A stretch of 64,000 nucleotides of DNA, taken from the NCBI GenBank assembly GCA_002269645.1, contig NIVC01001694.1, forward strand, positions 1 to 64,000, written 5' to 3'. Below are positions 18,051 through 45,870 of this stretch, piece after piece. The translations under genes were made by a program, and so were the position numbers. A model generated the notes under the pieces. The model searched no databases. It was not told the origin of the DNA and was given only the letters and a program-made list of their open reading frames with translations. Numbering within the stretch: the stretch's first letter is position 1; each line of letters starts with the position of its first letter. This stretch comes from Macrostomum lignano (lineage: Eukaryota).

Positions 18051-19973
18051 TCAAATGCGGAAGCTGTCCCCTTTGCCGTCGATATGCCTCAGGCGCAGGT
18101 AGAAATCCGAGCCGACACCCTGCATGGTTTCGAAGGTGAGGCGGCCGCCAAGGTAGTGCGCGTAGGCGCGCGAGGTTGGCAATCCGAAGCCGAAGCCGTG
18201 CATCGGGCCCACCGAACGGGACTCGGAGACCCGGTCGAAGAACGACTCATTCTCGTCGCTGTGCTTGCCGGAAGTTGAGAAATGGTACTCAAATATGCTG
18301 GTCGCGATGTCGTGCGCAATGCCGCCGCCGCGATCGCTGAAGCTGCAAATTTTAATGTAATTAGCAAAAATAGACCGTTATACGCTATTTTTTCTACTCA
18401 TCGGTAACTTTAAGTAGGGTAGTGCGAACATTTCTAGCGCTTTTTGATTAATGTGTGAGAATGAACGCACACACGCAACCCAGCCAAGACTATTCAAAAC
18501 TGCTTCTTAAGTTATTCTAGAAAATTCTTCTACGAAATAATTTTAAATTCGAGAACAATGGAGAGTCTAGAAATGGCGCTAGAGAGTCTAGAAATGGCGC
18601 CAGATAGTCTAGAAATGGCGCCAGATAGTCTAGAAATGGCGCCAGATAGTCTAGAAATGGCGCCAGATAGTCTAGAAATGGCACCAGAGTCTAGAAATGG
18701 CGCCAGGGCCAGAGAAGCTAGAGTAGAAATGGCGCCAGAGAAGCTAAAAATGGCGCCAGAGAATCTAGAAATGGCGCCAGAAGAAATAGAAATGGCGCAA
18801 GGAAAGCTAAAAATGGCGCCAGAGAATCTAGAAATGGCGCCAGAAAAACTAAAAATGGTGTCAGAAAAACTAGAAATGGCGCCAGAGAAGCTAGAAATGG
18901 CGCCTAAGACGCAAATACAGTCGTACAGACTCACCGAATAATGAAATCGACATCATTGTTAGCCACTGTGATGGTGACCTCGGGCAGGGAGCCGACCTTG
19001 GCCCTGTTGTGCTCAACCGTGGCGCGGAACGCGTTCTTCAGCACCTCGGTAACGATGTACTCAACCGGCTGGATGATGTAGGAGAAGGCCGCCTTCCTGT
19101 TGCCGTTGATCTTCACCGCAGGCGCCAGGCCGTACTTCATCTGGCACAGCTTGGCCACGTGAGCGGCCCGGCTGTCGATGAGGTCGCCGGGCAGAACCGG
19201 GTGCACACGACGCCGACAAAGTCCGGACGCTCCTGGCGCAGAGCCAGATGGTGCTCGCACAGCAGGCGGATGCCCAGCCTCGATGTCAGGGTCTTGTCAA
19301 GAAACTGCCTGACCAGATGCGGATCCCGGATGTGCCGGCTGCACTCGCGGAAGCCCTCGGCTAGCATGGTGACAACGTCCTTGTGGTCGTCGAGCAGCTG
19401 ACGAACTACGCCGGAGTACTGCTCCTCCTCAGCCAAGTTGGTGACGGTGGGGTAGTCAGACAGGATGTGGAATGCCCGGATGTACAGCTCGTGCACGGAC
19501 AGGATGGTCGGATTGCAGCCGATGATGAAGGGCAGCGAGCGGAAGTCGTCGATCCGATGGGCGATGCGAACTGGCAGCTCCTTCTGCAGGTACTGAGCCG
19601 ACCGGAGCACGTAGTTCTCGTCGGTGGCGCGGCCGGAGTACAGCAGCGAGGCCGGGGTCAGACGGACCGAGTTCTTCTTCGCCGCGGCGTCGATAGCGGA
19701 CTGGTTGTAGTAGGAGGTCACGGATCTGGTGCGCTCCCGTTCCAAGCTACTGTTGCCGTTGCTTCCATTCCCGCTGTTGGCGGCTGTCCCAGCTGAAGAG
19801 TTGCGCGACGAATCAAGGAACTCGTTGCTGCGCAAGGCCAGGCGCGAATTCGATAGCTTAGACATCGATCGACAGCGAACTGGCGATGCCTGCTGCTGGC
19901 ATGGCACGGGCTTCGCCAGACACGCGGTCAATGCCGAGTGCATAGGCAGTATAGCTTGTGTACTTTTGCGCAT
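18051..19973 (-). CDS. BCKDK: branched-chain alpha-ketoacid dehydrogenase kinase (mitochondrial)
   Basis: Exon 1 is 19973-18935 and exon 2 is 18342-18051 (phase 2 matches). Motifs: [70 protein letters not shown]. One frameshift in a C run at ~19190. Confidence 0.93.
18560..18905. repeat. 21-bp minisatellite (AGTCTAGAAATGGCGCCAGAT) in BCKDK intron
   Basis: About 16 units; source of the LEMAPDS ORF. Confidence 0.95.
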
Positions 19974-23432: not shown

Positions 23433-24349
23433 TAGCGCCAATTCATTATTCAAAATTGCAGACAAAAAACTCAACATAAGCTATGACATTGAGAACAATT
23501 GAATAGCATATACGCTTAGTTTGTTCAACTTAAAGGACTTTTTAGGCGCTGAATGCACTAATTTTATTATATATTTAGAATTATATAGAATTATATGCAC
23601 GTAAAAGATTAACGACAACTTTCCAGCAAAGCGAACAAGCAGCAGTATAGTTAACGCTAAAGCGCTCGAGCTAAAAAGAAACATTAAGCTAGCAAAGATA
23701 AACACAGCTGATATACAGTGCGCATATGCACTATACCAGACACAATATTTATGGTGTCTCAAGTAACACAGCCGCATAGCAAACCAAATGAAACAACAAT
23801 AATGAAACAATAATTAGTGCTATAATAGCTGTCAAACAGAAGATAAAAGATGTACAAGGAGATGTGCAACAAAACAGTGATTGAAGATGAAGCAAAATAG
23901 ACAGGCATGCGTCTCTCACAGATATGATGATTCTGCATCGAAACAAGAAATGAAAGTTTATCAGAGACTAAAAAAGCAAATAGGCACTGCCGCTAATAAC
24001 ACTATTGATGATCTAACCAGAGACACATTGTTAACCATATTAGTAATAAGCAATAATAATAAAAGTGCACTACTAGAACTCAACGCGTCCTATATTTTGG
24101 CATCTAAGAATAGCGAAGGAAAAGAGAAAAAGTTAAATTTAAGAGAGCAGCAAGTGTAAGATTACCAACAGTGTGTCATGAGGATGGACTAGGCTAATCT
24201 AGAAGAGTCAATGGCTAACAATTAATCACTAACAGATTATACAAACTTTCTCGATAAACTTTATCAAGCAATCGATAATAACTCATTAATTATGCTAAAA
24301 TATAGTTTGCCTTTATGGGTCTACCAACTGTTATGTGTCTATCAACCCA

Positions 24350-25015
24350 AACCTGAACTCAAACCCAAAACTCAAACCCAATTACCGAAACCCAAACTCA
24401 AGCCCAATTAACTCAAACCCGAAGTCAAACTCAAACCCAAACCCAAACCCGAAGTCAAACTCAAACCCAAACCCAAACCCGAAGTCAAACTCAAACCCAA
24501 ACCCAAACCCGAAGTCAAACTCAAACCCAAACCCAAACCCGAAGTCAAACTCAAACCCAAACCCAAACCCGAAGTCAAACTCAAACCCAAACCCAAACCC
24601 GAAGTCAAACTCAAACCCAAACCCAAACCCGAAGTCAAACTCAAACCCAAACCCAAACCCGAAGTCAAACTCAAACCCAAACCCAAACCCGAAGTCAAAC
24701 TCAAACCCAAACCCAAACCCGAAGTCAAACTCAAACCCAAACCCAAACCCGAAGTCAAACTCAAACCCAAACCCAAACCCGAAGTCAAACTCAAACCCAA
24801 ACCCAAACCCGAAGTCAAACTCAAACCCAAACTCAAACCCAAACCCAAGCCCAATTAACTCAAACCCAAACTCAAACCCAAACCCAAGCCCAATTAACTC
24901 AAACCCAAACTCAAACCCAAACCCAAGCCCAATTAACTCAAACCCAAACCCAAACCCAAGCCCAATTAACTCAAACCCAAACCCAATCCCGAACTCAATC
25001 CCGAACCCAAACCCG
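24350..25015. repeat. 30-bp minisatellite (CCGAAGTCAAACTCAAACCCAAACCCAAAC) built from AAACCC-like hexamers
   Basis: About 14 perfect units at 24417-24830 with degenerate flanks. Confidence 0.97.
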
Positions 25016-25144
25016 AACGCTAGAGTTGAGAATAAAATAAAGTTGTTAAACCAGAGCATCGATTTCAGACAGTTGAAACTGAACAAATTTGCAAAATTTC
25101 TTGTTAAAATTCGAGAGATAAATTCAGATTCGATGGGTTTAATC

Positions 25145-28100
25145 TCAGATATCCGGCAGGTCCACAGAGTTCAGCAATCTACTAACCAAAGTGTCAAAGG
25201 TGGCCAGAGCAGTGTTGAGATGCTGGGTGCTCAGATAGACGCCAGCCCAAGCCGGCCGGGCTGCCTGCTTCAACTTGATCACCCGATTGGCGCAGTCGGT
25301 CCGCTGAGCCGGTGACGCCATCGGCTTGGCCAGCATGTGGTAGCACAGCAAGGCCAGCTCGGCAGTGAAGCCAATCAGCCGCTCCTCCGGCGTGCCTTCG
25401 CCAGGCGATTTCAAATGCAACTTGGGCACGGGCCTGAGTTCGATCTCCTGATCGGGCAGCAGGCCGCAGAACAACGCCTGGAACGGGCTGGGCTTGTCAG
25501 CCTGCGACACGGCGCTCTCGGCCGGCTCCAGCTTGGCTAGGGGCTCCGGCAGCCAGCGGGAGGCGGCGCCGGCCACGGCTGACGAGTCATCGGCTGCCCC
25601 GTTGTTGAGCACGGCGGGATTCCAGGCGAGGCCCAGAGTGACAGCGTGCACCGGCAGGCTCGTGAGCAGGTGCGGCCCGATGCCGCCGCCGTCCCAGTCG
25701 CAGGAGACCACGCCTGATAGGCCGGGCAAGCTGGTGAGGCTCTTGGCCAGGCCTGGTTAGAGGGAACAGAGGAGCACATTATAACACGACGAAGTGTGCA
25801 TTTAACAACATAGTCTATGGCCAAACCGTGGTACGAGTATTAAGTAAACAGAGATATTAATATTGAAACCAAGTATGCGGTCCTTATGACCTATAATATA
25901 TAGTCAGCTCACGCGTAGTTCGATCTGATTCACTTCAGTGATTAAAAATGCACTTGTACAGTAAACCGTAGATGTTGTAGATCACTGTAGGCCTGATCTA
26001 CATTGCCAGTAGTGTTGGTCAGCGTCGTTGCGGTAGCGATATCAGTTGTTCCACTGTGTTCCGAGACTGGCTCATCACTGTCAATGAATCGACCATCACA
26101 ACACACGTTGCTCTTGATTAGGCGGCTCAACAGTGGTCTGTAGGAGTTCACGTCACAACCACGATGCAGTGCACGCTATATTCTTACGTTCTTACACAAA
26201 TGCGTGCCGGACAACACCGAGGCTGCAATCTTCTGCCGAGGCGCTGACGGACAGGCGAGTGAGCTTCCAAGATGTCAGCAGTTCGTCTACCTCGGCGGTC
26301 TGGTTCCCGACGTCCGCGAGGATCTGCGGCGTCGCCAAGGACTTGCCTGGGCTGCCTTTCGTTCTATAAGGTCAGTCCTGCAGTCCGAGGCCCTACCGGA
26401 CCGCCAGAGGGCGGCGCTGTTCCAGGCGGTGATCGAGACCGTCCTGTTATACAACGCCGAGAGCTGGACGCTGACAGACTCGCTCGAGGCTCAAGTCGAC
26501 GCGGCGCACGCTGGCCTGCTGCGCGCCGTCTTCAAGATCGGCAACGAGCGAGTCACCAACACGGCGCTCTACCATCGCGCCGGCCTGGCCCGTCCTAGCG
26601 ACCTGCTGCGCCGTCGGCGACTCCAGCTGGCAGGTCACGCTATCCGCGCCGAGGCCTACTGTCCGGAGCCGGTGCAGGAGGTGCTGCTACTTACGTTGCA
26701 GGCACCCTACCGGCGGGGACAGGCGAGGACTCGGCGCTACGTCGACTGTCTGCTGGCTGACGCCGGCGCCCCGGACTCTGCCGGCGGTGCGGCCTTTGTT
26801 CGCGCCCAAGCTTCGAAGCGCGCCATCTGACGCTGCTTTTGCGAACTGGCAGCGTACTCTGTTGTTGTTGTTACACAAAGCAGGTGTCCAGATATTCCAT
26901 CTGTAGGCCTGTAGAGCTGTCGAGATCTTGGACTCAGGGAATGCGTCCGGCTCAACTCAATAAATCATTGATTTGATGCGTGGACATTCCAAGAAATCAT
27001 TTCATTTGGAAAGTGCAGCAGCTCTATTAATCCTACAGGGTACTTCGGTACTCCTTATGGAAGTCCGTATTGCTAAAACAAGACGATCTATAGAAACTGT
27101 GTTTACCTGGACACAGGCGAGTCCGTTGCAGACTGTGACAGCCGGTAAACGACAGCCACGCGCCTGTGGCGGGCGCCAGAACGAATTCTGGCAGCGCAGA
27201 GTGCAGATAGGTTGCCCGGTCCTCGGGCCGGTCTCTGGGCAGGCAGTGATCAATGCAGGTGATTGGCAGTTTCTGCAGCCAGGGCGGCAATGAGAAACCG
27301 GACGAGGCCAAGTAGAGATGCTGCCGGCCGAGGCCCAGCCAGACCGGCGCCTCCTGCTCAGGGCCCTGGGCCAGGTGAGCGGACAGACGGGGGCCCAGGT
27401 GCAGCGGGCAGTTCGGCGGGAAAGCACCTAGCAATACATCTGCCTGGCTTTGCACCTGCGGGAGCGTTGGGGATCGACGTGTTCTGGCGGGATGATGAAG
27501 GATTATCGACATCCTAAATCCACTCAAACCTGAAGGATTATCGACATCCTAAATCCACTTGACACTGAAGGATTATCGACATCCTAAATCCACTTGACAC
27601 TGAAGGATTATCGACATCCTAAATCCACTTGACACTGAAGGATTATCGACATCCTAAATCCACTTGACACTGAAGGATTATCGACATCCTAAATCCACTT
27701 GACACTGAATGGTTATCGACATCCTAAATCCACTCGACACTGAATGGTTATCGACATCCTAAATCCACTCGAAACTGAAGGATTATCGACATCCTAAATT
27801 CACTCAAACCTGAGGGATTATCGACATCCTAAATCCACTTGACACTGAAGGATTATCGACATCCTAAATCCACTCAAACCTGGAGGATTATCGACATCCT
27901 AAATCCACTTGACACTGAAGGATTATCGACATCCTAAATCCACTTGACACTGACGGATTAGAGACATCCTAAATCCACTTGACACTGAAGGATTATCGAC
28001 ATTCTAAATGGTCTAAGCCATCAGCTCCTTGCTCACCTGAGTCAAATCTGACACTGCAATTCCAATATCAATGGCTAGCACAGGCGTGAGGCAGAGCTCC

Positions 28101-31100
28101 TGGGCAGACCGAACCACCCTGCGCAGATCCTCCTGCGCGTACGGACAGGCGTGCGCGGTGCTGCCCAACCGAAAGAACAGGTGCAGCTGGTTGGCCCGCA
28201 TGCAGGCGGCAGACTCGGCTACGCTAATGAGAGCCTCCGGCCGAGGCAGCAGGCCCGAGGAACAGTCGACAAGAACGCCGCGAACCAGAGTGGTGGGCCA
28301 GTCCCACACTCTGATGCCGGGCACCAGGCCCATTGAGATCTCTGCACAGACTGTTAGCAGGGATGACAGCACCTGAGGCGTGAGCGGTTTATTATCAATC
28401 AATTGCTGGTTTGTTGGATTTAAAGGCAAGCCTAGCAGTTTCACATTGTTTAGTATTTGATAGTAAAATCATTTTTGCAGCCCAATAATTGCAAACTGAT
28501 GGCCTCAAAATCTCACCATGTGACAACCTGAAAATCTCACTCTGATAGTCTCAAGATCTCACCCTGACAGTCTCAAGATGCCACCCCTGCAAGTCTCATA
28601 ACTCGTATTCTCACTCTAATGGCCTCAAAAAGATCTCATCCTGACAGTCTTAAAATCTCATCCTGACAGTCTCAAAATCTCACCCTGTGATTGCCTCAAA
28701 ATCTCACCCTGTGATGATCTGAAAATCTTAAAATGGTAGCCTCAAAATCTCACCCGATAGTCTCAAGATGTCACTCCTGAAAGAATCAAAACCTCATCCT
28801 GATAGTCTCAAAATCTTACCCTGTGATGTCCTCAAAATCTCACCCTGTGATGATCTGAAAATCCTAAAATGGTAGCCTCAAAATCTCACCCGATAGTCTC
28901 AAGATGTCACTCCTGAAAGAATCAAAACCTCATCCTGATAGTCTCAAAATCTTACCCTGTGATGTCCTCAAAATCTCACCCTGTGATGATCTGAAAATCC
29001 TAAAATGGTAGCCTCAAAATCTCACCCGATAGTCTCAAGATGTCACTCCTGAAAGAATCAAAACCTCATCCTGATAGTCTCAAAATCTTACCCTGTGATG
29101 TCCTCAAAATCTCACCCTGTGATGATCTGAAAATCTTAAAATGGTAGCCTCAAGATCTCACCCCTGATGGCCTCAAAATCTCACCCTGACAGTCTTAAAA
29201 TCTTACCCTGACAGTCTCAAAACCTCCCCCTGTGGTAGCCTCAAAATCTCAGTCTCACAACCTAACTCTGAATAGCTGATATAAAAAATCTCACCCTGAT
29301 CTCAATTAAAATCTCACTGATGGTCCTGCAAGAATCGCCAATAAATCTGAGCCTATAAACCCCATAGAAAACCGGTGTCAGCCTCACCGCAGCCCCGTTG
29401 AACAGGCCGCGAGCATCGGCAGCCAGCAGCCTGATGCCGGAGCTGGTGACCTCCAGATAATAGCCCTCAGGCCGGCCCCTGCACACCCGGTGCCCGATCT
29501 CAAGCGACACTCCCTGCACAGGCTTGGCAACCACCAGGGTCCTGGGGCGGAACTGGGCCAGCCTGCCAGCCAGCCAGTGTAGCGCCGGCTCGCCATCCTG
29601 ATGATTCAAAGACAGCACCAGCGGCTGCTGCTGTTGCTGACCAACTGGCAGTCGAAAATGCTGGCCAATAAGCAGCTGAGACTGCTGCGGTCTCGGCCAG
29701 AACGCTCTGTCCAGCACGGAGTCCTTGGCGAAGTCGGACCCGTTCATTGGCCGGGCGCGCGCCTCGTCTGCTGGAACAGCAACCGCCGACGCGGCGGCGG
29801 CAGTGGCGCCAGAGTCGGAACCGTTGGCCACTGATGGCGAGGTTGATGAAGCTGCCGACATTTGAGTTGGCTGCGAGTACAATTGATGCTGAGACTGCTG
29901 ATGATGCTGCTGGGATATGAGCTGCATCAGTTGGACAGACTTGTCGCTTAAGCTGCACAGATCAAAGCCGTTCTTGTCCGCATAAGGCCTGAGCGTGTTG
30001 GGGAGGCGGATCACTGCTATTGGGAAACTTATAGGGGAATTCAGTGTGGGATTACCTGTATATTATATTTTATATTAATTCCCTAGCAACAGCTGTTGTT
30101 TTGAAGTTGAGAAGCAGAATAATAATATGTAATAAGATTGCAGTTAGTCATGAACATTCCACTGACTCCCTGACGAAACACACGCATGCTGTACGCAAAC
30201 ACGTCGCTCACGCAGGGTGTACAGCGGCGCTGGCTCCCTAATCGTCAGGCAGTTGTACATGTACACACTGTGTGTTTGAAGCCATCGCGATGAGAGAATT
30301 GCATACCAACACGGAAAGTCTCAAATCAATGTGACTAAAATATAACTAAAAGCAAACTAGTCTACTAACTAGTAGACTCTTTTAGATATTTTGCATTTTT
30401 ATAATTTCTCTTAATGTATTTTTGCCGACATGGCAAAAGCTGCTAATCTATAGGAACAAATCTACCTACCTATTTACCTACATAACTACCTACCTACCTA
30501 CTTACCTATATATCTACCCACCCACCTACCTACCAACTTGTCTACCTACCTATTTACCGACCTGCCTACCAACGAACTAACCTTATTATCTACCAACCTA
30601 CCTACTTGCCTATTTACCCGCCTACCTACCCATCTACCCACCTACTAACCAACCTAACAACCAACCTAGCATCGTAAGTACCTACCTACCAACCTTACGT
30701 ACCTACCAACCCTACCTACCTACCAACCCTACCTACCTACCAAACCTACCTAACCTACCAACCTACCTAACTACTTACCTACCAAACTACCTACTTACCT
30801 ATCTACCCGCCTACCTACCGGCTACCTACCTACCTACCTATCAATTTACATATCTACCTACCTACCAACCGTACCCACATTACAAAGTGCAGTCGAACAC
30901 CCAGTCTACTTACTCAGCTTCGAGTTTCTAAAATTAGCAAACCTACAATACAAGAACAATTATAGCAAGAGAAGAGAAGAGTGAGCGCAACACACACAGA
31001 AACACGCGAGCATATTTGCGAATCATGCACACATAGAAAATAAAAAAAATGTTCAGGAAACAAGACGAGCGACGCCCAAACAGACCAAATGGGCCTCTCT

Positions 31101-34100
31101 GAGAAGTGTTTCATTCTCTCTCTCTCAAAGCCGCCCTGTGCCGCAACTGGCTGACCTCAAACTAGCTGCGACCGTGTGGAACAATGCAATAAATTAACAT
31201 TTCATACATTATATACTGTACACTTTTACAAGTAAGAGTTATATTTTTTCAACTTGGATATTTAGGTTAAATAATAATAATACTATATTATAATGCACAG
31301 ATAGATCGTCACGTGAGGCAACGCATGAGAGAAAGCGATAACGCTGGTAATTTATTTATTTATTTGGTTAACTGTAAGCAAGCGTGAATGGCCTAGACGT
31401 GAGATGGCAATAGTGGAAATGTGAAAGAGAATAGATTCGGCGAGAGGGTGATTTGAAAAGGTGCTAATGCTGAAATAGGAATATATTGGGGTGAACGTGA
31501 ATAGATCAGGTGTGAACATGAATAGATCAGGTGTGAACGTGAATAGATCAGATGTGAACGTGAATAGATCAGTTGTGAATGTGAATCAGGTGTAAGATCA
31601 GGTGTGAACATGAATAGATCAGGTGTGAACGTGAATAGATCAGATGTGAACGTGAATAGATCAGTTGTGAACGTGAATCAGGTGTGAGATCAGGTGTGAA
31701 CATGAATAGATCAGGTGTGAACGTGAATAGATCAGATGTGAACGTGAATAGATCAGTTGTGAATGTGAATAGATCAGGTGTGAACGTAAATAGATCAGGT
31801 GTGAACGTAAATAGATCAGGTGTGAACGTGAATAGATCAGTTGTGAATGTGAATATATCAGGTGTGAACGTGAATAGATTAGTTGTGAACGTGAATAGAT
31901 CAGGTGTGAACGTGAATAGATCAGTTGTGAACGTGAATAGATCAAGTGAACGTGAATAGATCAGGTGTGAACGTGAATAGATCAGGTGTGAACGTGAATA
32001 GATCAGGTGTAAATGTGAATAGATTATGTGTGACGTGAATAGATTGTGTGAACGTGAATAGATTAGGTGAACGTGAACAAGGCTCAAGATTTCAACAGAC
32101 AACAGCACAGCAATTATAATGACTCACCCCTGTTTCACATAGACTGAAGGATTAGCGCCGTATTGAATGAGCAGTCGGACCAGCTCCAGGTCAGCTTTAA
32201 TCAAGCACAGATGCAAAGGAGTCACGCCATCCCTATTGGCTACGTTAGGATTAGCACTTCGTTCTAGAAGCAGTCTGACGCAGGCTGGCTGGGCAAAATG
32301 GCAGGCCCAGTGCAGAAGGGTGTTCTGCTGACTGTCAGTACGATCCAGACTGTTCACGGAGATGCCAATCTGCAGCATGCGAACCAGGCCCTCCGTGCTG
32401 TCATTTGGGGGGGGTTATGATTTTATTCATTAACGAAGCAAATGCATGGCCTCTGCAACATCGAATGTACATGCGCTCTAACAACGTTCTTACATCCTTA
32501 GGGACACTGCAACTATTTTAGCGAGATGTCAACGACGTTAGCAACACCACAATAATCTTGGCGACCCCACAATGACCTTGGTGACACCACAATGGCCTTG
32601 GTGACACCCCAATGGCCTTGGTGACACCCCAATGACCTTGGCGACATCCCAATGACCTTGGCGACATCTCAGTGACCTTGGTAACACTACAATGGCCTTG
32701 GCGACACTCAGTGGTGTGATTGGAAAGTTTGCCAAATTTCGCGCCGACTGAAAATTTTCGCGCCATGCCAATAATATTCTTCTGACAGCCAAATAAGTCA
32801 ATAGATGATACTTTTGAAGATGCGTCTGGCTACCAATTAGCATGTCTCTCAAGTCCCAGCCGTGTCCCGCCTGAACTTCTTGTTGGCGATGTCTCGGGCA
32901 GACGACTGCTCGTGCTGGTGATTGACGACGTTGACAGCAGCTCAGCAGCCTTGCGCTTCAAGACGAGCTCAGCTAGCTTCTCTGCCTCCTTCTGCTTCTT
33001 CTTCTGCACATTCTGCTGCTGACGCCTCAGTTCTTCAATCTCGGCGTCCTTGCTCTTGGTGGCCGCCGTCAACTCGTGAAGCAGCAGTTAGATTAATCTC
33101 CTAAGCTATGACACTCTTGTATTTCATACTGTCTGACAAGAGAATAAGTGTAAAAAGCAGAAAATAAGAATGCAATTTTCGCGCCCATGGTTCCACAAAA
33201 TTTCGCGCCAGATCCCCAGGATTCGCGCATTCGCGCCATTTTCGCGCCTGGCGCGAATTCGCGCCTGAATCACACCACTGGCGACACTGCAATGGCCTTG
33301 GCGACACCCCAATGACCTTAGCGACCCAATAATGACCTTAGCGACACCCAATGACCTTGGCAAAACCACAATGACCTTGGCAAAACTGCAATAACCTTGG
33401 AGACACCACAATGACCTTAGCGACACCCAATGACCTTGGCAAAACCACAATGACCTTGGCAAAACTGCAATAACCTTGGAGACACCACAATGACCTTAGC
33501 GACACCCCAATGACCTTAGCGACACCCCAATGACCTTGGCGAAACCACAATGACCTGGGCGACATCCCAAGGACCTTGACGACACCCCAATAATGACCTT
33601 GGAAAAACTCCAAATGACCTTGGCGACACCCCAATGACCTCTAGCGCCATTCCAATGATCTTAGCAACGCCTTAATGACTTGAAGCAAGACCAAGTGTGA
33701 CCTTAACGATAGTAATATTGTTTAAGAGACAACTTAACAAAAAAAGCAATCCTTTAAAAATGTAATGTCAAAAAACGCTTGACTCAGTTTTTTAGTCCTA
33801 ATCAGAGCACTAATTAGCAAGAGAAGACCCAACCTAAAGGCTACGGCTATTTTGTTACAGAATTAACAGTGTGTGCGTTTATCTGCGGAATTAAAAAACT
33901 CATTAATTTCTTCCTGCACAAAAAAATCTTATATACATGAATTCAACCGTGCATATAAGATATGTAAAATCATATTTGATTAGACCACAAATACAGCATT
34001 GCAAGGCATACTTGGACAAATTTAAATGCATTTCATCAAATGCACAAGAGACAAACAAGAGAAAGACAAAACACACACAGACAGACAGACCGCTTAACTC

Positions 34101-36662
34101 ACTCAGCCTGAGAAATTAACTGGATGCAGTGCTGCAGGAATACGGCCAAAATGTCCGGATGAAAGTTTGCATCCGCCAATGCGGTCTTCTGCGATTCGTT
34201 TAATAACCGCGGATCGATGCCCGTGTTGAGCAGGATGCGGATGCCGTCCAGCATCTTTTGCTGAGGGGTTCAGGAGTGAATTGGGGGGCAATGTGCCTAG
34301 CTGTGTGAACTAAGCACTGGACAGCTGTGACCTAAATAGATTTAAGCTAAACACTGGCAAATGGTGACCTAAACACTGGTGGTGGTGACCTAAACCTGGG
34401 AATGGGGACCTAAGCATTGGTGGTGGTGACCTAAACCTGGGGATGGTGACCTAAACACTGGGGATGGTGACCTAAACACTGGGGATGGTGACCTAAACAC
34501 TGGGGATGGTGACCTAAACACTTGGGGATGGTGACCTAAACACTGGGGATGGTGACCTAAACACTGGGGATGGTGACCTAAACACTGGGGATGGTGACCT
34601 AAACACTGGTGGTGGTGACCTAAACACTGGGGATGGTGACCTAAACCTGGGAATGGTGACCTAAACACTGGGGATGGTGACCTAAACACTGGGGATGGTG
34701 ACCTAAACACTGGGGATGGTGACCTAAACACTGGGGATGGTGACCTAAACACTTGGGGATGGTGACCTAAACACTGGGGATGGTGACCTAAACACTGGGG
34801 ATGGTGACCTAAACACTGGGGATGGTGACCTAAACACTGGGGATGGTGACCTAAACACTTGGGGATGGTGACCTAAACACTGGGGATGGTGACCTAAACA
34901 CTGGGGATGGTGACCTAAACACTGGGGATGGTGACCTAAACACTTGGGGATGGTGACCTAAACACTGGGGATGGTTACCTAAACAAAACCGATTGAGTGA
35001 ACTAAAGTACCAAGCAATCGCCTCAATAAAACACTGATCATTTCAGTTTTCTAGAATATTTGGTTAGAACAAAACATCAGGTAATAAATTACCTGACAGG
35101 CGATATGCAGAAGCGAGCCCTCATTAGTTGTGTACTGCATCAGCTTTTGCAGTTTCTCTTGGTCGGCGCTTTCAACTGAAACGAGTCATTTGAAAACAGC
35201 AATAAAAATAAATAAGATTATTGATTTGGCAGTTTAAAACTATACGATCTGTCTAATTAAAGTGCGTCTTTCTCAGAGAGCTCTTAAGCAGCCACGCCCA
35301 AAAATGATTAAATTCAGCCTAAGAGCTTTTGAATGCCTTCATTTCAATTTTCTTACATATAATCCTGCAGGCTTTCAATGCGAAAATAATCAATAATTTA
35401 ATTTATACCCTTGACTCTACTTCTCTTCCTCACCCCATTCTCTACTTCTCCCTCGCCCTCACTACCTCTCTCCCTCTGCCAGATTCATGCATAAAAACTA
35501 ACAATAATAATCGTATCACTTTCTATTTTCTGTGTACGAGTTTTTGCGAGCTCTGGCCCCCAATTGCGCCGTTTTAATGTAATGTGTGTTGTGTACGACC
35601 TATTTAGAGCGCTTCGTATAATGGTTGCACGATCGATATTTTAGGCCTCTCCGTGCGCGTGGAGTACGAAGGTCCAGTTTTATTACTTTTAAATATGGCC
35701 TGTCCCACGCCTCGGTCAACTTCCCTCTTATCTCTCTTATCAGACTGTTTACAGCCGTTTAAAACTTTCACTATCCGCCTGTTGCTAAATATAGCTTGTC
35801 AAGTTTTAGTTCGTTCTAGCAAACAATTGAACATCCTTACCCTCTTTACCTCTACCTCACCCTCTCCCTCACCCTCTCTACCTCTCCCTCACCCTCTCTA
35901 CCTCTCCCTCACCCTCTCTACCTCTCTCCCTCACCCTCTACCTGTTCCTCACCCTCTATCTCTCTTCCTCACCCTTTTTATCTCTCTTTCTCACCCTCTC
36001 TTCCTCACCCTCTCTCCCTCACCCTCTCTACCTCTCTCCCTCTCTCCCTCTCTCCCTCACCCTCTCTACCTCTCTCCCTCTCCCTCACTACCTCTCTCCC
36101 TCACCCTCTCTACCTCTCTCCCTCACCCTCTCTACCTCTCTCCCTCACCCTCTCTACCTCTCTCCCTCACCCTCTCTACCTCTCTCCCTCACCCTCTCTA
36201 CCTCTCTCCCTCACCCTCTCTACCTCTCTCCCTCACCCTCTCTACCTCTCTCCCTCACCCTCTCTACCTCTCTCCCTCTCCCTCTCTACCTCTCTCCCTC
36301 ACTACCTCTCTCCCTCACCCTCTCTACCTCTCTCCCTCACCCTCTCTACCTCTCTCCCTCACTACCTCTCTCCCTCACCCTCTCTACCTCTCTCCCTCAC
36401 CCTCTCTACCTCTCTCCCTCACCCTCTCTACCTCTCTCCCTCACCCTCTCTACCTCTCTCCCTCTCTACCTCTCTCCCTCACCCTCTCTACCTCTCCCTC
36501 TCTCCCTCACCCTCTCTATTTCTTTTCTCACCCTTTCTACCCCTCCGTGGCCCTCCACCCAACCCTCTTACCAGTAGACAGCATGACTCGCAGAATATCT
36601 GATCGACATTCTACAATGCATTTCTTCATCTGTAGGAACAAAGACTCCAAACTGGAATCCAT
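25145..36662 (-). CDS. ankyrin-repeat + GH20 (beta-hexosaminidase-like) fold protein, 8 exons, 831 aa, probably catalytically inactive
   Basis: Exons: 36662-36572, 35175-35093, 34260-34103, 32397-32128, 29988-29388, 28372-28037, 27455-27107, 25752-25145. All junctions are GT-AG and phase-compatible, and the 2496-nt total is divisible by 3. Ankyrin motifs: SLLHIACQ, TLLHWAC, GVTPLHL. GH20 domain-2 motifs: WPRPQ, EGYYLEV..GIRLLA.D.RGLFNG. Barrel start: IRVWDWP...RGVLVD...NQLHL. Confidence 0.85.
26201..26870 (+). mobile_element. 5'-truncated non-LTR retrotransposon (RTE-like ORF2 C-terminus) in intron 7 of the ANK-GH20 gene
   Basis: ORF 26204-26830 has FVYLGG, VLLYNAESWTLT and RRRRLQLAGH. It has a (GTT)n tail at ~26860-26870 and a 9-bp TSD TTACACAAA at 26192-26200 and 26871-26879. 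Confidence 0.9.
27495..28005. repeat. 35-bp minisatellite (GAAGGATTATCGACATCCTAAATCCACTTGACACT), intron 6
   Basis: About 14 units. Confidence 0.96.
28505..29255. repeat. ~20-22-bp degenerate satellite (CTCAAAATCTCACCCTG) with 136-bp higher-order repeat, intron 5
   Basis: The block CTCAAAATCTCACCCGATAG recurs at 28741, 28877 and 29013. Confidence 0.92.
30460..30870. repeat. degenerate (CTAC)n microsatellite, intron 4
   Basis: Directly visible. Confidence 0.9.
31490..32075. repeat. 21-bp minisatellite (GTGAACGTGAATAGATCAGGT), intron 4
   Basis: About 27 units. Confidence 0.95.
32560..33650. repeat. 20-21-bp minisatellite (CAATGACCTTGGCGACACCC) interrupted by a hAT-type element, intron 3
   Basis: Units are present on both sides of 32709-33280. 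Confidence 0.93.
32709..33280. mobile_element. non-autonomous hAT-type DNA transposon, 572 bp
   Basis: Perfect 13-bp TIR CAGTGGTGTGATT / AATCACACCACTG, 8-bp TSD GCGACACT at 32701-32708 and 33281-33288, and clustered subterminal TTCGCGCC motifs at both ends. Confidence 0.92.
34368..34985. repeat. 21-bp minisatellite (GGTGACCTAAACACTGGGGAT), intron 2
   Basis: About 28 units. Confidence 0.96.
35835..36540. repeat. polypyrimidine repeat (CTCTCTACCTCTCTCCCTCACC), intron 1
   Basis: Directly visible; source of the SLPHPLYL ORF. Confidence 0.95.
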
Positions 36663-39716: not shown

Positions 39717-42700
39717 TCAATGCCCAGCTCCGTTGCCAGCCGAGCCGATGCCACCGCTGCCGCTCTCGCCCAGCAGCACCCTAGAGTCGTCCATGAGGCT
39801 CGGCTGAGGCCTTTGCGCCACCAAATTCTTGGGCAGCTTATCGTAGTAGAGCTGGTAGAGGTCCCTGTCAGCTGGGCAGCTGCAGCGGAAGGCCTCGCAG
39901 TCGTACATGGCCGAGTAATAGGCCTGCAGGTTGTTCAGGTCCGCCGGCACGTCAAAGTCGCGATAGAACTGCCGGGGAAATCGGGGTGTTTATTGACGAC
40001 TTTTCAATGTGTTTATTAACTAGATGGTCTTGCGGGTGTTTATTGGCGATACTCGGGGTGTTTATTGGCTATACTTAAGGGTGCTTATTGGCGATATTTG
40101 AGAGTGTTTATTGGCGATACTTGAGGGTGTTTATTGGCAATACTTAAGAGTGTTTATTGGCGATACTTGAGGGTGTTTATTGGCGATACCTGAGGGTGTT
40201 TATTGGCAATACTTAAGAGTGTTTATTGGCGATACTTGAGGGTGTTTATTGGCGATATCTGAGGGTGTTTATTGGCGATACCTGAGGGTGTTTATTAGCG
40301 ATACCTGAGGGTGTTTATTGGCAATACCTGGGGTGTTTATTAGCGATACTTGAGGGTGTTTATTGCCGATACTCAAGAGAGTTTATTGCCCATACCTAAG
40401 GGTGTTTATTGTCTATTGCCCATGCCTAAGGGTGTTTATTGTCTATTGCCCATACCTAAGGGTGTTTATTGTCTATTGCCCATAATTAAGGGTGTTTATT
40501 GTTTATTGCCCAATATCTAAGGGTGTTTATTGTCTGTTGCCCATACCTAAGGATGTTTATCGCCGATACTTAAGCCTTTTTTGTCCATACCTAAGGGTGT
40601 TTATCATTGTTACTTAAGTGAGTATAGTGCCTATACCTAAGGGTGTTTATTGCCGATATTTAGTGTGCATTTAGGCATATTCATGGGTGTTTATAGACGA
40701 TTCACAGAGCACTTCGGGTAGAGTTTATTGGTTGCCTTACAGTGACTTGAAGTCCAGCAAATTGGGAATATTCAGAGTCGTTAGAGACCAAAGTTACCTT
40801 GCCAGCCATCTTGACGTGATGCAGTTTAGGCATGAGCTGGCAGTCAGCATAGGTGAGCTCATCAGACAGCAGGTAGCGGCAGCCGCGGGAGCCCAGGAAC
40901 GAGTCAATTCTACGCAACACGTGCAACAGCGGAGTCGAGTTCTCAGTCTTGAGCATCAGGTTGAGATTCTTGTACAGATCATAGAAAGCTTTCTCCGCTT
41001 CGCCTTCGTCAGCTGATTCTTTGGGCAGAGCCAGACAGGGACATTTCCAGATGTCCATGAGCTGCTCGATTTCGTCGTTGGTGTCGAAGACGGTGTTGGA
41101 CAGGTCGCTGCCGCGCGGGTCGGCGCCTTTGATCACCCGGGCAACAGGGAGGTGACGGCCAACCTCCAGAGCTTGATAGGCCTCAGGCGGCATGTCCGGG
41201 TTCACAGTGGTGACAAACAGATTGAGGTATTTCTTCTCGGCTAAGATGTAGAACACCATGAACCATTGCTGGCTGATTGGGCAAGGGCCTTTGTCCTCCT
41301 TGCAGATATGGGAAGCCTATGGTAGAGGTAAAGACAGGTAATTATCCTAGTGTAGGTTAAGTTAATACACATTCATATTGGAGCAAATTAGTATTTTCTA
41401 CTACAGACAATATTTGGTGCTCTTTAGAATTGCTTGCATATGTTATATATGTATGGCATATGTTATATATGCACACAAAGTATCAATACAAGTATATAAT
41501 TTTTTGCTAAAGTTCTATTTCTAATGTCACTATATTGTCCTTTAGCTCATGCTGCTTGTACTTAATATTCTAGCTTTGCTCAATCTAGAATAGTTTTTTT
41601 GCAAAACTAAAGGACTTCTTTATAGGTATTGAATATACCAAAATATGCCATACACATTAAATGTGTATACCAAAAGCCCAAAATCACTTTTTGTATACCA
41701 ATGGCAACGTGTATACTAAACTTCTTGAATGCACCCAAGAAGTTTCTGGCATTTATGCCTTTTACCTGACTATGACTTTGCCAAAAAGTCATGTATCCTA
41801 TTAAAAATATTCAGATAGCAAAGTTAAAGCTTTTATTGAAGAAATTGCAGTTAACCTAATGATGGTTCTAAAAAATCATTCAAACTATCAAAAGTCTAAA
41901 ATATACTAACTAAGTAATGTTACTTAGTAACATTGTTACTCAGAGCAATGTTACTCTTGCTCTGATGATCTAAATAACATCATTTTGGACAAATAGTACC
42001 AACTCTTTTTTTCATACTAAATTTAATATCTTTAAAATCAGACAATGGAAACAAAAGTTAAGAACTCAAATATAGCAAGAATTCAACCATATACTTATAG
42101 TAAGTTAATTAACAAGCAAGCAAAAAATTGAAGTAAAAGCTGACAAATGGGTAACTGGCTGCAGTAAATATATAGAATGACTGTGGTAAAGATTGATCTA
42201 GACCAATGAGACAATGAAAGTTGCATATGAATTTTGATTACAGTGTGTTTTATCCTCCAAAGGGTGAAAATCTCACTTGCTTGGGCAATATTTGAATGCA
42301 CATCTATGATTTTTGGCATTACAAAAAGAAGGAGCAAAAATCAATGAAGCTAAAGCACAGTGGTGGCAAATATTCTATTGCTTTAAAAGTTTATATGTTT
42401 TTTTTAACTTTTTCTATAGATGTCTCTTTGTCAAAGTAGCCTAACAAAGAAGTCTGAATGCATTTAATCAAATGTACTTTTGCTACTTTTTGCTAGCTTG
42501 TTGACTTACTATAAGTCTATGGTTGAGCTCATGCATGCCCAACCTAAAAATTTCACCCATCCAGTCCAACTTAGTTTTGTTTAGATTTGCGACTTAGTTT
42601 CTCCTAATAGCAAAGTTCCTCTTGATTTTGACTTAATTTTCACTTTGTATATGGCTTTTCTTGCCTTTTTTTCTCTTTCTCTTTCCCTTTTTCCTTCTTC

Positions 42701-44069
42701 CTCTTTTCCCTCTTTTCTTTTTTCTTTCTTCTACCGATTTTTCATTTTTTGTATTTTTGATTTTGCAACTTACCTTGGCTGGTGGCTATAGCACCCATCT
42801 GGTTCTGATAGGTTGGATGGGTATTGGGCAAGTTAGGTTAAGCTCCTACTATATTTGCATTTATAACTTTTGTTTCCATAGTCTAATTTTAGAGTTTAAA
42901 GTTAATATAAAGAGAATTTCCACTTTTAATTTGTGTAAAATGAGGTTATTTGGATTATTAGAACCTATAGTCATGAAGGTGGCCTTTTTCATAGAAAATT
43001 CTGGTACAAAAAGAGGTTGGATATGCGCTGCGCTGATACATTCTAGCCCAACAATAGGCAAGGAAGAAAAATTTAGCACAGTATAACATAAGACAAAAAA
43101 TGGCATAATTTAATGCAAAACAGACTTCCAACTCGAGACAATATCTTTCTAAGACAAAATTAGCATGTTATTTTTTAGTACTTTTTTGCTAGTGTATTAA
43201 TAGATTTTTTAATTAATAGAATTAATATTGCATTTTCTATGAAACAAATTTAAATACAAGCTTTATTGATATTTTTCAAATAGAAAATTACTGATTTTTG
43301 TATTTTTCAAAAAGTTGCAATATATGGTATAATGCAAGTGAACTTTTTTTTAGGAATAGGCCTAGTTTTGGGACATTGCACAAGCAATTTTTTTGATAAG
43401 ATTTATTTTAATGCATAAGGCAATCAATTTTTTATAGGATTTGTTATGGCATAGGCATGCCATGATCTTGACTATGGATTAGAACAAAAGATATAATGAA
43501 AAGTAACACTATTTTTATGATAGCCTTTGCATTTATAGCTTAATTAAATTTTGTATCTAGGACTAGAACTGAGATGTTTTGCTAGATAGATATATACCTA
43601 TAGTCTAAAAATTTAAGTTTATTTATTACAATCAATTTTTATTTTTAAAAATAAATAAGAAGCAGTAATAGAAAAACAGTTATTAATTGAAAAGTCAAAG
43701 GCCTAACTAATCATGTCAATCATATACTTACCAACAAACATTTTTTGTGAATTAAAATGAATTGAAAAGTCATAATCTTAGACATAAAAATAAAAGGCTA
43801 AAATTCTAATAAAATTGTTGATTTCAAACCAAATAAAAAAATAAAAATATAGACATATAGAGAAAAATATAGACAAAAAAGTATATTTTTTAAATTATAG
43901 CCTATCTCATCTAGGCCTAATGTCTTGATAATGTCAATAAATATAGATGAAAAGAAATATAGGAGAGTTTTTGCAGTTGGCTTCAAAATTGTAGGTTTAC
44001 CTTGATAAATAGCTCAACAACAGGCTTTCCATCCTCAACATCACCCTCGAATCCATTCATGTCTGACAT
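39717..44069 (-). CDS. chloride intracellular channel (CLIC / EXC-4-like GST-fold) protein, 279 aa
   Basis: Exons 44069-44001, 41316-40798 and 39968-39717, all phase 0, with no lesions. Motifs: VELFIK|AS, CPISQQWFM, VTTVN, TYADCQLMPKLHH, CPADRD. Confidence 0.93.
39985..40660. repeat. 23-bp minisatellite (GAGGGTGTTTATTGGCGATACTT) in CLIC intron 2
   Basis: Tandem units grading into a longer variant after ~40400. Confidence 0.93.

Positions 44070-45197: not shown

Positions 45198-45870
<673 letters not shown>

What the first reader, a model, noticed from the sequence alone, without database searches (positions are those of the whole stretch)
25145..36662. Intact ankyrin + GH20-fold protein whose catalytic HxGGDE motif reads HLGPRL: candidate glycan-binding pseudoenzyme scaffold
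Seen: eight phase-compatible exons, not captured by any single ORF in the track, splice into an uninterrupted 831-aa ORF. It runs ankyrin repeats, a Q/S/A-rich linker, GH20 domain 2, then a GH20-like barrel. Established: active GH20 enzymes use an Asp-Glu pair in HxGGDE/HxGxDE and an Arg in the DxxR motif after RG..hhD. Seen: the apparent equivalents here are PLHLGPRLS (27401-27384) and RGVLVDCSSG. Inference: this is a cytosolic (no signal peptide seen), hydrolase-dead fold coupled to a protein-interaction module, possibly an O-GlcNAc/GlcNAc reader or adaptor. The intact frame despite repeat-laden introns suggests purifying selection. I cannot tell from here whether the family is already described.
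Basis: partly seen in the sequence, partly recalled or inferred. Interest (0 to 1): 0.7.

Follow-up and report, generated by a model that had tools for sequence, protein, structure and literature searches.

The report
Ankyrin-linked dead hexosaminidase, animal-wide family
This flatworm gene encodes an intact protein that joins ankyrin repeats to a sugar-cleaving enzyme fold (GH20) whose catalytic residues are all replaced, and it belongs to an old, never-studied family found across invertebrate animals.

Summary
Eight GT-AG exons on the minus strand (36662-25145) splice into an 831-aa ORF. It is identical to the RNA-seq-based GenBank model BOX15_Mlig015421g1 of Macrostomum lignano.

The protein has an N-terminal ankyrin module, a disordered S/A/Q-rich linker, a GH20b domain, a (beta/alpha)8 barrel and a C-terminal helical bundle. 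The non-ankyrin part is homologous over its whole length to bacterial GH20 hexosaminidases (hhalign E 3e-77). Foldseek places the model with GH20C, GcnA and GH84.

The N/H-x-G-x-D-E motif reads H-L-G-P-R-L, so D becomes R536 and E becomes L537. The beta1 Arg, the beta2 Glu-His, the beta3 His, the beta5 and beta6 Trp and a beta8 Asp are also lost.

New here: this is not a flatworm oddity. About 50 orthologues, ~900 aa each, in molluscs, annelids, arthropods, echinoderms, amphioxus and others carry a conserved G-P-R-L-S signature. All are uncharacterised. Sponge, coral and choanoflagellate relatives show other partial losses, and one protist-type relative keeps every catalytic residue.

It is therefore a conserved GH20 pseudoenzyme, most likely a cytosolic binding or adaptor protein. 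The 'GlcNAc reader' idea is untested and weakened, because half of the sugar pocket is gone and its charge is reversed. The Macrostomum copy is an unusually divergent member.

The parts
36572..36662 (-). Exon 1 (ATG at 36662; residues 1-30, N-terminal helix of the ankyrin module)
   Evidence: Spliced model reproduces P0001 exactly; donor CTG|gtaaga
35093..35175 (-). Exon 2 (residues 31-58)
   Evidence: Acceptor tttcag|, donor |gtaatt
34103..34260 (-). Exon 3 (residues 59-110)
   Evidence: Acceptor cctcag|, donor |gtgagt
32128..32397 (-). Exon 4 (residues 111-200; ankyrin repeats with NTLLHWA / TPLHLC motifs)
   Evidence: Pfam Ank/Ank_2 hits at residues 115-195; splice sites
29388..29988 (-). 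Exon 5 (residues 201-401: end of ankyrin module, disordered linker, most of the GH20b domain)
29727..29891 (-). Disordered S/A/Q-rich linker, residues 234-288
   Evidence: pLDDT below 50 in the MSA-based model; 51% S+A+Q; coordinates checked
28037..28372 (-). Exon 6 (residues 402-513: end of GH20b, barrel strands beta1-beta3)
28253..28282 (-). beta1 motif RGVLVDCSSG (residues 432-441). The canonical substrate-binding Arg at D+3 is S440 (28258-28256)
   Evidence: Bacterial relatives have R at this column in 96% of sequences; bilaterians vary Q/P/K/S
28166..28171 (-). beta2 R469-L470, in place of the Glu-His of active relatives (LY-EH-F)
   Evidence: E is 97% conserved in bacteria and is R in 61% of bilaterians
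27107..27455 (-). Exon 7 (residues 514-629: barrel strands beta4-beta7)
27384..27401 (-). H-L-G-P-R-L (residues 532-537), the equivalent of the N/H-x-G-x-D-E catalytic motif. D becomes R536 and E becomes L537 (27389-27384)
   Evidence: MAFFT and hhalign columns; translation of the coordinates
27156..27158 (-). W613 in beta7 (APATGAWLS, corresponding to CPGTSSWNS), a retained pocket Trp
   Evidence: W is 94% conserved in both bacteria and bilaterians
25145..25752 (-). Exon 8 (residues 630-831 plus TGA: beta8, the AWN motif, the C-terminal helical bundle)
25691..25699 (-). beta8 D648-W649-D650 (bacterial D-W-G-D; bilaterian D-W-S-G). W649 is retained and the conserved second Asp column is G651
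25286..25300 (-). T-D-C-A-N (residues 781-785), a family-specific motif of the C-terminal helical domain (TDLAN in orthologues)

Best explanation
The locus is the Macrostomum lignano orthologue, a fast-evolving one, of an ancient and uncharacterised animal protein family.

Architecture. An N-terminal ankyrin-repeat module is joined by a disordered linker to a complete GH20-type hexosaminidase body. That body consists of a GH20b domain, a (beta/alpha)8 barrel and a C-terminal helical bundle.

Shown. The body is homologous along its whole length to bacterial GH20 enzymes of the HEXD-like kind. The acid/base Glu and the polarising Asp of the N/H-x-G-x-D-E motif are replaced by Leu and Arg. Most other active-site polar residues are replaced too. 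The replacement motif G-P-R-L-S is conserved across bilaterian phyla.

Inferred. The protein cannot carry out substrate-assisted hexosaminide hydrolysis. It is cytosolic and works by binding rather than by catalysis. The ankyrin module would engage a protein partner. The remodelled barrel pocket would hold a ligand or a second partner. That pocket keeps the aromatic residues W613, W649 and W673, but arginines now sit where the carboxylates were.

History inferred from relatives. An active ankyrin-GH20 enzyme existed in early eukaryotes. It lost catalysis in the lineage leading to animals, and the fold was then kept for a non-catalytic role.
For: Gene model and transcript. The model is exact and canonical. 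It is identical to a GenBank model that derives from a genome-guided RNA-seq transcriptome (PMC5730564).

Homology. A full HMMER scan of 1.84 billion representatives with residues 286-831 gave 383 hits. The best are ~900-aa animal proteins at 27-32% identity, followed by ~600-aa prokaryote-type proteins. Those prokaryote-type proteins hit Pfam PF00728 and solved GH20 structures. A bilaterian profile against a profile of 65 bacterial sequences gives probability 100%, E 3.4e-77 and 500 aligned columns, including the C-terminal domain.

Structure. The MSA-based AlphaFold2 model has pLDDT 79.5 and pTM 0.71. Foldseek top hits are S. pneumoniae GH20C, S. gordonii GcnA, Paenibacillus Hex and GH84 O-GlcNAcases, with E about 1e-13 and TM up to 0.58.

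Residue losses. R(beta1) is 96% conserved in bacteria and is S440 here. E(beta2), 97%, is R469. D, 99%, is R536. E, 100%, is L537, and Leu occupies this column in 94% of bilaterians. W(beta5), 96%, is A563 (C in bilaterians). W(beta6), 100%, is H583 (Y in bilaterians). D(beta8), 89%, is G651. Forty fold-determining or pocket positions are shared, including W613, W649 and W673.

Family breadth. G-P-R-L-S occurs in most orthologues from molluscs, annelids, a nemertean, a priapulid, chelicerates, crustaceans and insects, and relaxed G-P-x-L-[ST] variants occur in some arthropods, echinoderms and amphioxus.

One ancient fusion. The ankyrin module is collinear, with 41% identity to a coral, 36% to a choanoflagellate and 32% to a sponge. 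P0202 keeps all catalytic residues together with the ankyrin repeats.

Literature. The Asp-Glu pair is the polarising and acid/base pair of GH20. Arg mutants of dispersin B lose more than 1700-fold activity (PMC11357414; PMC11308363).
Against: No biochemical or expression data for this protein were available, so inactivity is inferred from sequence.

Model coordinates could not be inspected. A non-homologous carboxylate reaching into the pocket cannot be formally excluded. Macrostomum has a lineage-specific D650 next to the lost beta8 Asp.

The Macrostomum protein keeps only 50% of the family-conserved positions, so its function may differ from, or be weaker than, that of typical family members.

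Cytosolic location rests on the absence of an obvious signal peptide and on the presence of ankyrin repeats, not on a predictor or an experiment.

What the pocket binds, if anything, is unknown.
Confidence: 0.75

Rival explanations
1. Canonical glycan reader. The dead barrel still binds terminal GlcNAc, GalNAc or O-GlcNAc in the old -1 subsite, and the ankyrin repeats couple that recognition to a protein partner.
For: The pocket aromatics W613, W649 and W673 and the CPGT-x-x-W-N-S strand are conserved from active bacterial enzymes to the animal family. A GH20 enzyme mutated at the acid/base Glu (dispersin B E184) still binds its substrate and is used as a probe (PMC11357414). GH18 chi-lectins set a precedent (own knowledge).
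Against: More than the acid/base is missing. Also replaced are the beta1 Arg that binds the sugar hydroxyls, the Asp that orients the acetamido group, the beta5 and beta6 Trp and a beta8 Asp. Arg residues now occupy two former carboxylate positions (R469, R536). In Macrostomum the family's beta6 Tyr is His and the CPGT strand is degenerate (APATGAWLS).
Confidence: 0.15
2. The Macrostomum copy is a decaying or functionless relic of the family, under relaxed constraint in a neopolyploid genome with redundant copies.
For: Only 35 of 70 positions that are at least 85% conserved in 18 other bilaterians are kept. Every other member keeps 74-96%. It has one of the longest branches in a rough NJ tree. 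The genome is highly redundant (PMC5730564), and a second copy, P0003, exists.
Against: A 2.5-kb reading frame is intact across eight exons with canonical splice sites. The gene model is derived from a transcriptome. The family signatures are retained: G-P-R-L-S, W613, W649, AWN and TD-x-AN. The model is confident for the barrel and the ankyrin module. The second copy also keeps HLGPRLS. Flatworms are generally fast-evolving (own knowledge).
Confidence: 0.1
3. It is still an enzyme, with either a new chemistry or a hexosaminidase mechanism that uses non-canonical residues.
For: The replaced residues are themselves conserved (R, L, C, Y and G at former E/D, E, W, W and D positions). That pattern is what neofunctionalisation looks like. 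A conserved Asp sits at the end of beta3 (D503 column).
Against: No conserved acidic pair is present at the strand ends of the barrel other than D437 and D503. Both have counterparts in active enzymes and are not catalytic there. The general acid/base position is a Leu in 94% of bilaterians. Sponge, coral and choanoflagellate relatives lost different members of the pair (D-Q, D-L and G-E). That pattern fits a release from catalytic constraint rather than a single new mechanism.
Confidence: 0.07
4. Gene-model artefact: the eight exons are not one mRNA.
For: Alternative database models exist. P0002 (1043 aa) reads through intron 7, and P0003 (563 aa) is shorter. My own first hand-built model picked a wrong exon.
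Against: The 831-aa model is collinear from end to end with orthologues from more than 15 phyla-level lineages, ankyrin module through C-terminal bundle. All splice sites are canonical. The annotation is RNA-seq based.
Confidence: 0.03

Closest known systems
Bacterial-type GH20 beta-N-acetylhexosaminidases of ~600 aa (GH20b + barrel + C-terminal helical domain; for example hits P0130, P0132, P0163), with beta2/beta4 motifs that I recall (not tested here) as resembling GH20 subfamily 1 (HEXD, nematode HEX-2 to HEX-5)
   Same: Homologous over the whole non-ankyrin length (hhalign E 3.4e-77, 500 columns). The domain order is the same. Shared motifs include RG-x-x-LD, the beta7 strand CPGT-x-x-W-N-S, D-W in beta8 and A-W-N.
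   Different: These enzymes carry R(beta1), E-H(beta2), G-H(beta3), D-E(beta4), W-x-D(beta5), W(beta6) and D-W-G-D(beta8), and they hit Pfam PF00728. The flatworm protein has none of those residues and no PF00728 hit, and it adds an N-terminal ankyrin module.
S. pneumoniae GH20C and S. gordonii GcnA (PDB 5A6K, 5AC5, 2EPO)
   Same: Best structural matches for the three-domain body (Foldseek E about 6e-14, TM up to 0.58). They have a barrel followed by a C-terminal helical bundle, as in T. suis HEX-2 (PMC11308363).
   Different: They are active enzymes with Asp222/Glu223. Sequence identity is 12-13%. They have no ankyrin repeats.
GH84 O-GlcNAcases (BtGH84, CpOGA, human OGA)
   Same: Same order of N-terminal alpha/beta domain, barrel and helical bundle, with equal Foldseek significance. 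Human OGA is nucleocytoplasmic, like the location inferred here.
   Different: There is no sequence-level relationship in the barrel: PDB phmmer gives E 2.5, and only in the N-terminal domain. The sequence homology is to GH20, not GH84.
Ankyrin-GH20 proteins of non-bilaterians: P0202 (EukProt transcriptome GILK01), Diaphanoeca grandis P0176, Pocillopora/Stylophora P0232, Sycon P0160
   Same: Same ankyrin + GH20b + barrel architecture, with a collinear ankyrin module (26-41% identity).
   Different: P0202 keeps every catalytic residue. The choanoflagellate has G-E, the coral D-L and the sponge D-Q at the D-E position. They lack the bilaterian G-P-R-L-S signature.
Glycoside-hydrolase pseudoenzymes such as GH18 chitinase-like lectins and heparanase 2 (own knowledge; HPSE2 appears in PMC12406646)
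   Same: The concept is the same: a conserved GH fold that has lost its acid/base residue and is kept for binding.
   Different: Different fold family. Those proteins are secreted, whereas this one is ankyrin-fused and apparently cytosolic. Here the sugar-binding residues are also largely replaced.

Membership tests
GH20 (fold and homology) | (beta/alpha)8 barrel homologous to GH20 catalytic domains, preceded by a GH20b alpha/beta domain | tested here: met
   Pfam PF02838 scores 29.0 bits against a cut-off of 26.1. PDB phmmer hit 7BWG has E 1.9e-5 over GH20b plus beta1-beta2. Profile-profile comparison gives E 3.4e-77. Foldseek finds GH20C and GcnA.
GH20 (active hexosaminidase) | Match to the Pfam catalytic-domain model PF00728 | tested here: not met
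   No hit at E<=0.01 for P0001 or for typical orthologues. Bacterial relatives score 63-82 bits.
GH20 (active hexosaminidase) | Asp-Glu pair in the N/H-x-G-x-D-E motif at the end of beta4 (polarising residue and general acid/base) | tested here: not met
   H532-L-G-P-R536-L537. D is 99% and E is 100% conserved in 72 bacterial relatives. Leu occupies the E column in 94% of bilaterians.
GH20 (active hexosaminidase) | Substrate-binding Arg after RG-x-x-LD (D+3) | tested here: not met
   S440. R is 96% conserved in bacterial relatives. The Arg is essential in dispersin B (PMC11357414).
GH20 (active hexosaminidase) | Aromatic pocket around the sugar and the acetamido group | tested here: inconclusive
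   W613, W649 and W673 are retained. The beta5 W is A563 and the beta6 W is H583. Coordinates could not be inspected.
GH20 (active hexosaminidase) | Hydrolysis of beta-linked GlcNAc or GalNAc | not testable with these tools
   Needs an enzyme assay.
Bilaterian ankyrin-GH20-like 'GPRLS' family (unnamed; defined here) | Collinear N-terminal ankyrin module, GH20b, barrel and C-terminal helical domain, about 830-1000 aa in total | tested here: met
   End-to-end alignments with P0121-P0129 and P0309-P0333. The ankyrin module is 29% identical to that of Owenia over 240 residues.
Bilaterian ankyrin-GH20-like 'GPRLS' family (unnamed; defined here) | G-P-R-L-S in place of G-x-D-E-T, plus R at the beta2 Glu position | tested here: met
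   HLGPRLS and R469.
Bilaterian ankyrin-GH20-like 'GPRLS' family (unnamed; defined here) | Retention of the family's conserved positions | tested here: inconclusive
   35 of 70 are kept, against 74-96% in other members. It is a member, but a divergent one.
Ankyrin-repeat proteins | Pfam Ank models above the gathering score | tested here: met
   Ank_2 66.3 bits, Ank 60 bits, Ank_4 52.8 bits. pLDDT is 90-98 over residues 1-220.
GH84 O-GlcNAcase | Sequence homology of the barrel, with the catalytic Asp-Asp pair | tested here: not met
   Only a marginal N-terminal-domain match (E 2.5). The similarity is at the level of fold only.

The most novel reading that the evidence does not exclude
The animal ankyrin-GH20 family is a new class of intracellular receptor. 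Its former hexosaminidase pocket has been rebuilt from anionic to cationic: conserved Arg residues sit at the beta2 and beta4 carboxylate positions, next to the conserved G-R-[IV]-P Arg after beta1. The aromatic floor is kept. On this reading the pocket binds an anionic sugar-like ligand, such as a phospho- or sulfo-hexosamine, a sugar nucleotide or an acidic glycoconjugate. The ankyrin module would pass that signal to a protein partner. This would be a metabolite- or glycan-sensing system that vertebrates, flies and C. elegans appear to lack.
Probability: 0.12. Interest if true: 0.8.

Novelty: new variant of a known kind. Interest (0 to 1): 0.55.

Why it matters
Pseudoenzymes derived from glycoside hydrolases are known, for example chi-lectins and heparanase 2. 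I found no described GH20 pseudoenzyme, and none fused to ankyrin repeats.

This one is not a single odd gene. It is a family conserved across most invertebrate phyla, with its own signature (G-P-R-L-S). Its history can be traced from an apparently active ankyrin-GH20 in a protist-type eukaryote, through partial losses in choanoflagellates, sponges and corals.

No vertebrate, Drosophila or C. elegans member appeared among the hits I examined, so the family seems to be missing from the usual model organisms. Published GH20 phylogenies filtered by the catalytic-domain signature and by length (300-750 aa; PMC11308363) and would have excluded it. That likely explains why it has gone unnoticed.

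It offers a clean natural experiment on how a substrate-assisted glycosidase pocket is repurposed. M. lignano has RNAi and transgenesis, so the family is experimentally tractable there.

Tried and rejected
1. My first hand-built splice model (892 aa) wrongly included a K/E-rich open frame at 33052-32834, missed exon 2 and used a wrong exon-5 acceptor. It was corrected against P0001.

2. The word-indexed homology search with the whole protein was swamped by generic ankyrin proteins. With the C-terminal 546 aa it found only Macrostomum. The exhaustive HMMER scan was needed.

3. The PDB profile search with full-length family alignment A2 returned only ankyrin structures and was uninformative for the barrel.

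4. The single-sequence AlphaFold2 model was unusable (pLDDT 41). It was replaced by the MSA-based model.

5. dN/dS between M. lignano copies could not be computed. No DNA is on record for P0003, and the collections hold no other Macrostomum DNA.

6. Model coordinates are not exposed, so I could not check directly for a carboxylate pair reaching the pocket from elsewhere. I used family-level conservation of acidic residues instead.

7. Pfam gave nothing for the ORFs inside intron 7, and only a sub-threshold hit for the intron-3 ORF.

8. Literature searches found nothing on the family. The terms tried were Macrostomum + hexosaminidase, GH20 + pseudoenzyme, Glyco_hydro_20b + ankyrin, and the locus tag.

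9. The NJ tree is star-like with long branches. I use it only to show that the Macrostomum branch is long, not for deep topology.

10. The source organisms of the metatranscriptome members P0152 and P0336 could not be identified.
Full report
**1. What is in the sequence**

The window is eukaryotic DNA. It is the first 64 kb of contig NIVC01001694.1 of the Macrostomum lignano assembly GCA_002269645.1, with the same coordinates.

No single ORF covers 25145-36662. Eight minus-strand exons do:
- 36662-36572
- 35175-35093
- 34260-34103
- 32397-32128
- 29988-29388
- 28372-28037
- 27455-27107
- 25752-25145

Each is bounded by AG and GT. Their phases are compatible, and together they give 831 codons plus TGA.

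The translation is identical to P0001, 'hypothetical protein BOX15_Mlig015421g1'. GenBank models of this assembly come from a genome-guided RNA-seq transcriptome (PMC5730564). The splice pattern therefore has indirect transcript support.

My own first splice model was wrong in three places and was corrected against P0001.

27401-27384 encodes HLGPRL, and RGVLVDCSSG lies at 28282-28253.

The introns are largely made of tandem arrays. Intron 6 is 514/581 bp of a 35-bp repeat. This is ordinary for a genome that is 15% simple and tandem repeats.

**2. Domain anatomy**

Pfam finds ankyrin repeats (Ank_2 66 bits). It finds Glyco_hydro_20b just above threshold (29.0 bits against 26.1). It does not find the GH20 catalytic model PF00728.

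A single-sequence AlphaFold2 model failed. A model built on a 117-sequence alignment is good (pLDDT 79.5, pTM 0.71). It shows:
- a helical/ankyrin module, residues 1-232, pLDDT above 90
- a disordered linker, residues 234-288, 51% S+A+Q
- an alpha/beta domain
- an eight-stranded barrel, residues about 430-680
- a C-terminal helical bundle

Foldseek against the PDB returns GH20C of S. pneumoniae, GcnA of S. gordonii and other GH20 enzymes. It also returns, with equal significance, GH84 O-GlcNAcases, which share the same three-domain layout (E about 1e-13, TM up to 0.58).

Sequence decides between the two. PDB phmmer matches GH20 enzymes over GH20b plus beta1-beta2 (7BWG, E 1.9e-5). It matches GH84 only marginally.

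**3. Relatives**

The word-indexed searches were blinded by the ankyrin repeats or found only Macrostomum.

An exhaustive HMMER scan of 1.84 billion representatives with residues 286-831 found 383 proteins.

The best hits are ~900-aa animal proteins at 27-32% identity. They come from:
- annelids, a nemertean and a priapulid
- horseshoe crabs, a mantis shrimp and a sea spider
- a louse, a planthopper and a centipede
- oysters, snails and octopods
- crinoid, urchin and starfish
- amphioxus
- Trichuris and a horsehair worm

All are 'uncharacterized' or mislabelled 'Tankyrase' or 'beta-N-acetylhexosaminidase'. A profile search added about 25 more, covering many molluscs, a hemichordate, a locust and a lanternfly.

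No vertebrate, Drosophila or Caenorhabditis protein appeared among those I examined. This points to absence but does not prove it.

Next in the list come ~600-aa prokaryote-type proteins. These are genuine GH20 enzymes: PF00728 scores 63-82 bits, and they match many solved GH20 structures.

A bilaterian profile aligns to a profile of 65 such enzymes with probability 100% and E 3.4e-77 over 500 columns. The alignment includes the C-terminal helical domain.

**4. The active site**

In GH20 the Asp and Glu of the N/H-x-G-x-D-E motif are the polarising residue and the general acid/base. A conserved Arg binds the sugar (PMC11308363; PMC11357414).

Column-by-column comparison gives the following.

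| Position | Bacterial enzymes | Bilaterian family | Macrostomum |
|---|---|---|---|
| beta1 Arg | R, 96% | Q/P/K/S | S440 |
| beta2 | E-H, 97% | R-F | R469-L470 |
| beta3 | G-H | absent | absent |
| beta4 Asp | D, 99% | R (56%) | R536 |
| beta4 Glu | E, 100% | L (94%) | L537 |
| beta5 Trp | W, 96% | C (89%) | A563 |
| beta5 Asp | D, 99% | variable | S565 |
| beta6 Trp | W, 100% | Y (100%) | H583 |
| beta8 | second Asp of D-W-G-D, 89% | G (94%) | G651, with a lineage-specific D650 beside it |

In contrast, 40 positions are shared between enzymes and the animal family. These include W613 (beta7, CPGT-x-x-W-N-S), W649 (beta8) and W673 (A-W-N).

No conserved acidic pair replaces the lost one. The only conserved barrel carboxylates, D437 and the D503 column, have counterparts in active enzymes.

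I could not inspect model coordinates. A non-homologous carboxylate in the pocket is therefore unlikely but not excluded.

**5. Evolutionary picture**

The replaced motif is itself conserved. G-P-R-L-S occurs in most orthologues from molluscs, annelids, the nemertean and the priapulid, and in several arthropods. Relaxed variants (G-P-Q/C/N/V/T-L-S/T) occur in echinoderms, amphioxus and some arthropods.

Ankyrin + GH20b + GH20 proteins also exist outside Bilateria:
- P0202, from a EukProt transcriptome, keeps every catalytic residue.
- The choanoflagellate Diaphanoeca has G-E at the D-E position.
- Pocilloporid corals have D-L.
- The sponge Sycon has D-Q.

Their ankyrin modules are collinear with the bilaterian one, at 26-41% identity. 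That is far better than generic ankyrin proteins, so the fusion arose once.

The simplest reading has three steps. An active ankyrin-tethered GH20 existed in early eukaryotes. Catalytic constraint was released around the origin of animals. A non-catalytic form with a new conserved signature was then fixed in bilaterians.

**6. The Macrostomum copy**

It is a real member of the family. It has the full architecture, GPRLS, R469, W613, W649, AWN and TD-x-AN.

It is also the most divergent member tested. It keeps 35 of 70 positions that are at least 85% conserved in 18 other bilaterians, while every other member keeps 74-96%. It sits on one of the longest branches.

A second genomic copy, P0003, keeps the motif. 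No DNA was available for dN/dS.

**7. Mechanism**

Shown:
- GH20 homology
- loss of the whole catalytic network
- conservation of the replacement residues
- the ankyrin fusion

Inferred:
- no hexosaminidase activity
- cytosolic location (no evident signal peptide or TM segment, plus ankyrin repeats)
- action by binding

The ankyrin groove is the obvious protein-binding surface.

The barrel pocket keeps its aromatic residues but has exchanged carboxylates for arginines. If it still binds a ligand, that ligand is more likely anionic or otherwise non-canonical than plain GlcNAc. I put it at about 0.15.

**8. Comparison and novelty**

The protein works like other glycosidase-derived pseudoenzymes, such as chi-lectins and heparanase 2. 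It is not an active GH20: the defining catalytic features were tested and are not met.

I found no paper on the family. The recent eukaryotic GH20 phylogeny selected sequences by the catalytic-domain InterPro entry and by a length of 300-750 aa, which would exclude it (PMC11308363).

I rate it a new variant of a known kind. Interest is moderate to good (0.55). The finding is solid, phylogenetically broad and testable. The function is unknown, and the gene itself is already an annotated hypothetical protein.

Noticed in passing
window 24344-36546 (introns and 3' flank of the gene): Almost every intron is dominated by its own distinct tandem array. Intron 1 has 35862-36546 (22/44/66-bp, CT-rich). 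Intron 2 has 34347-34985 (21 bp x30). Intron 3 has 33279-33640 and 32544-32707 (20 bp). Intron 4 has 31491-32077 (21 bp) and 30462-30875 ((CTAC)n). Intron 5 has 28496-29251 (22/136 bp). Intron 6 has 27496-28009 (35 bp x14.7, which is 514 of the intron's 581 bp). A 30-bp x22 array at 24344-25018 starts 127 bp after the stop codon. This is consistent with the genome's 15% tandem-repeat content.
   Followed up: partly
window 32830-33087 (-): An 85-aa K/E-rich, coiled-coil-like open frame lies inside intron 3 on the gene's strand. It is not part of the annotated mRNA. A stretch of it matched another M. lignano protein (P0093, 'PCRF domain-containing') at 88% identity, so it may be a dispersed sequence. 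The only Pfam hit is sub-threshold (TMF_DNA_bd).
   Followed up: partly
window 26204-26830 (+), intron 7: A 208-aa ORF lies antisense to the gene inside intron 7. The alternative database model P0002 (1043 aa) reads straight through this intron on the gene's strand. By memory the ORF resembles the tail of a retroelement polyprotein, but Pfam gave no hit.
   Followed up: partly
window ~39717-44069 (-) and ~19137-19973 (-): The neighbouring annotated genes are a CLIC-like/GST_C_2 protein (279 aa) and a BCDHK_Adom3 (branched-chain ketoacid dehydrogenase kinase-like) protein (278 aa). No functional link to the finding is apparent.
   Followed up: no
window 4001-6000, 42001-46000, 62001-64000: Three composition outliers. 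4001-6000 has GC skew -0.41 and AT skew -0.32. 42001-46000 has GC of only 0.28-0.32. 62001-64000 has GC 0.63 with AT skew -0.74. These are probably satellite or low-complexity blocks.
   Followed up: no
related proteins P0202, P0176, P0232, P0160 (not in the window): Ankyrin-GH20 relatives outside Bilateria lost different catalytic residues (choanoflagellate G-E, coral D-L, sponge D-Q). P0202, from an unidentified EukProt transcriptome (GILK01), keeps all of them. UniRef labels the coral proteins 'beta-N-acetylhexosaminidase' although they lack the acid/base Glu.
   Followed up: partly
related protein P0129 (Nucella lapillus): The segment FVSCGPRLSSFLLD occurs twice in tandem in this gene model. 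This is probably an assembly or annotation duplication.
   Followed up: no
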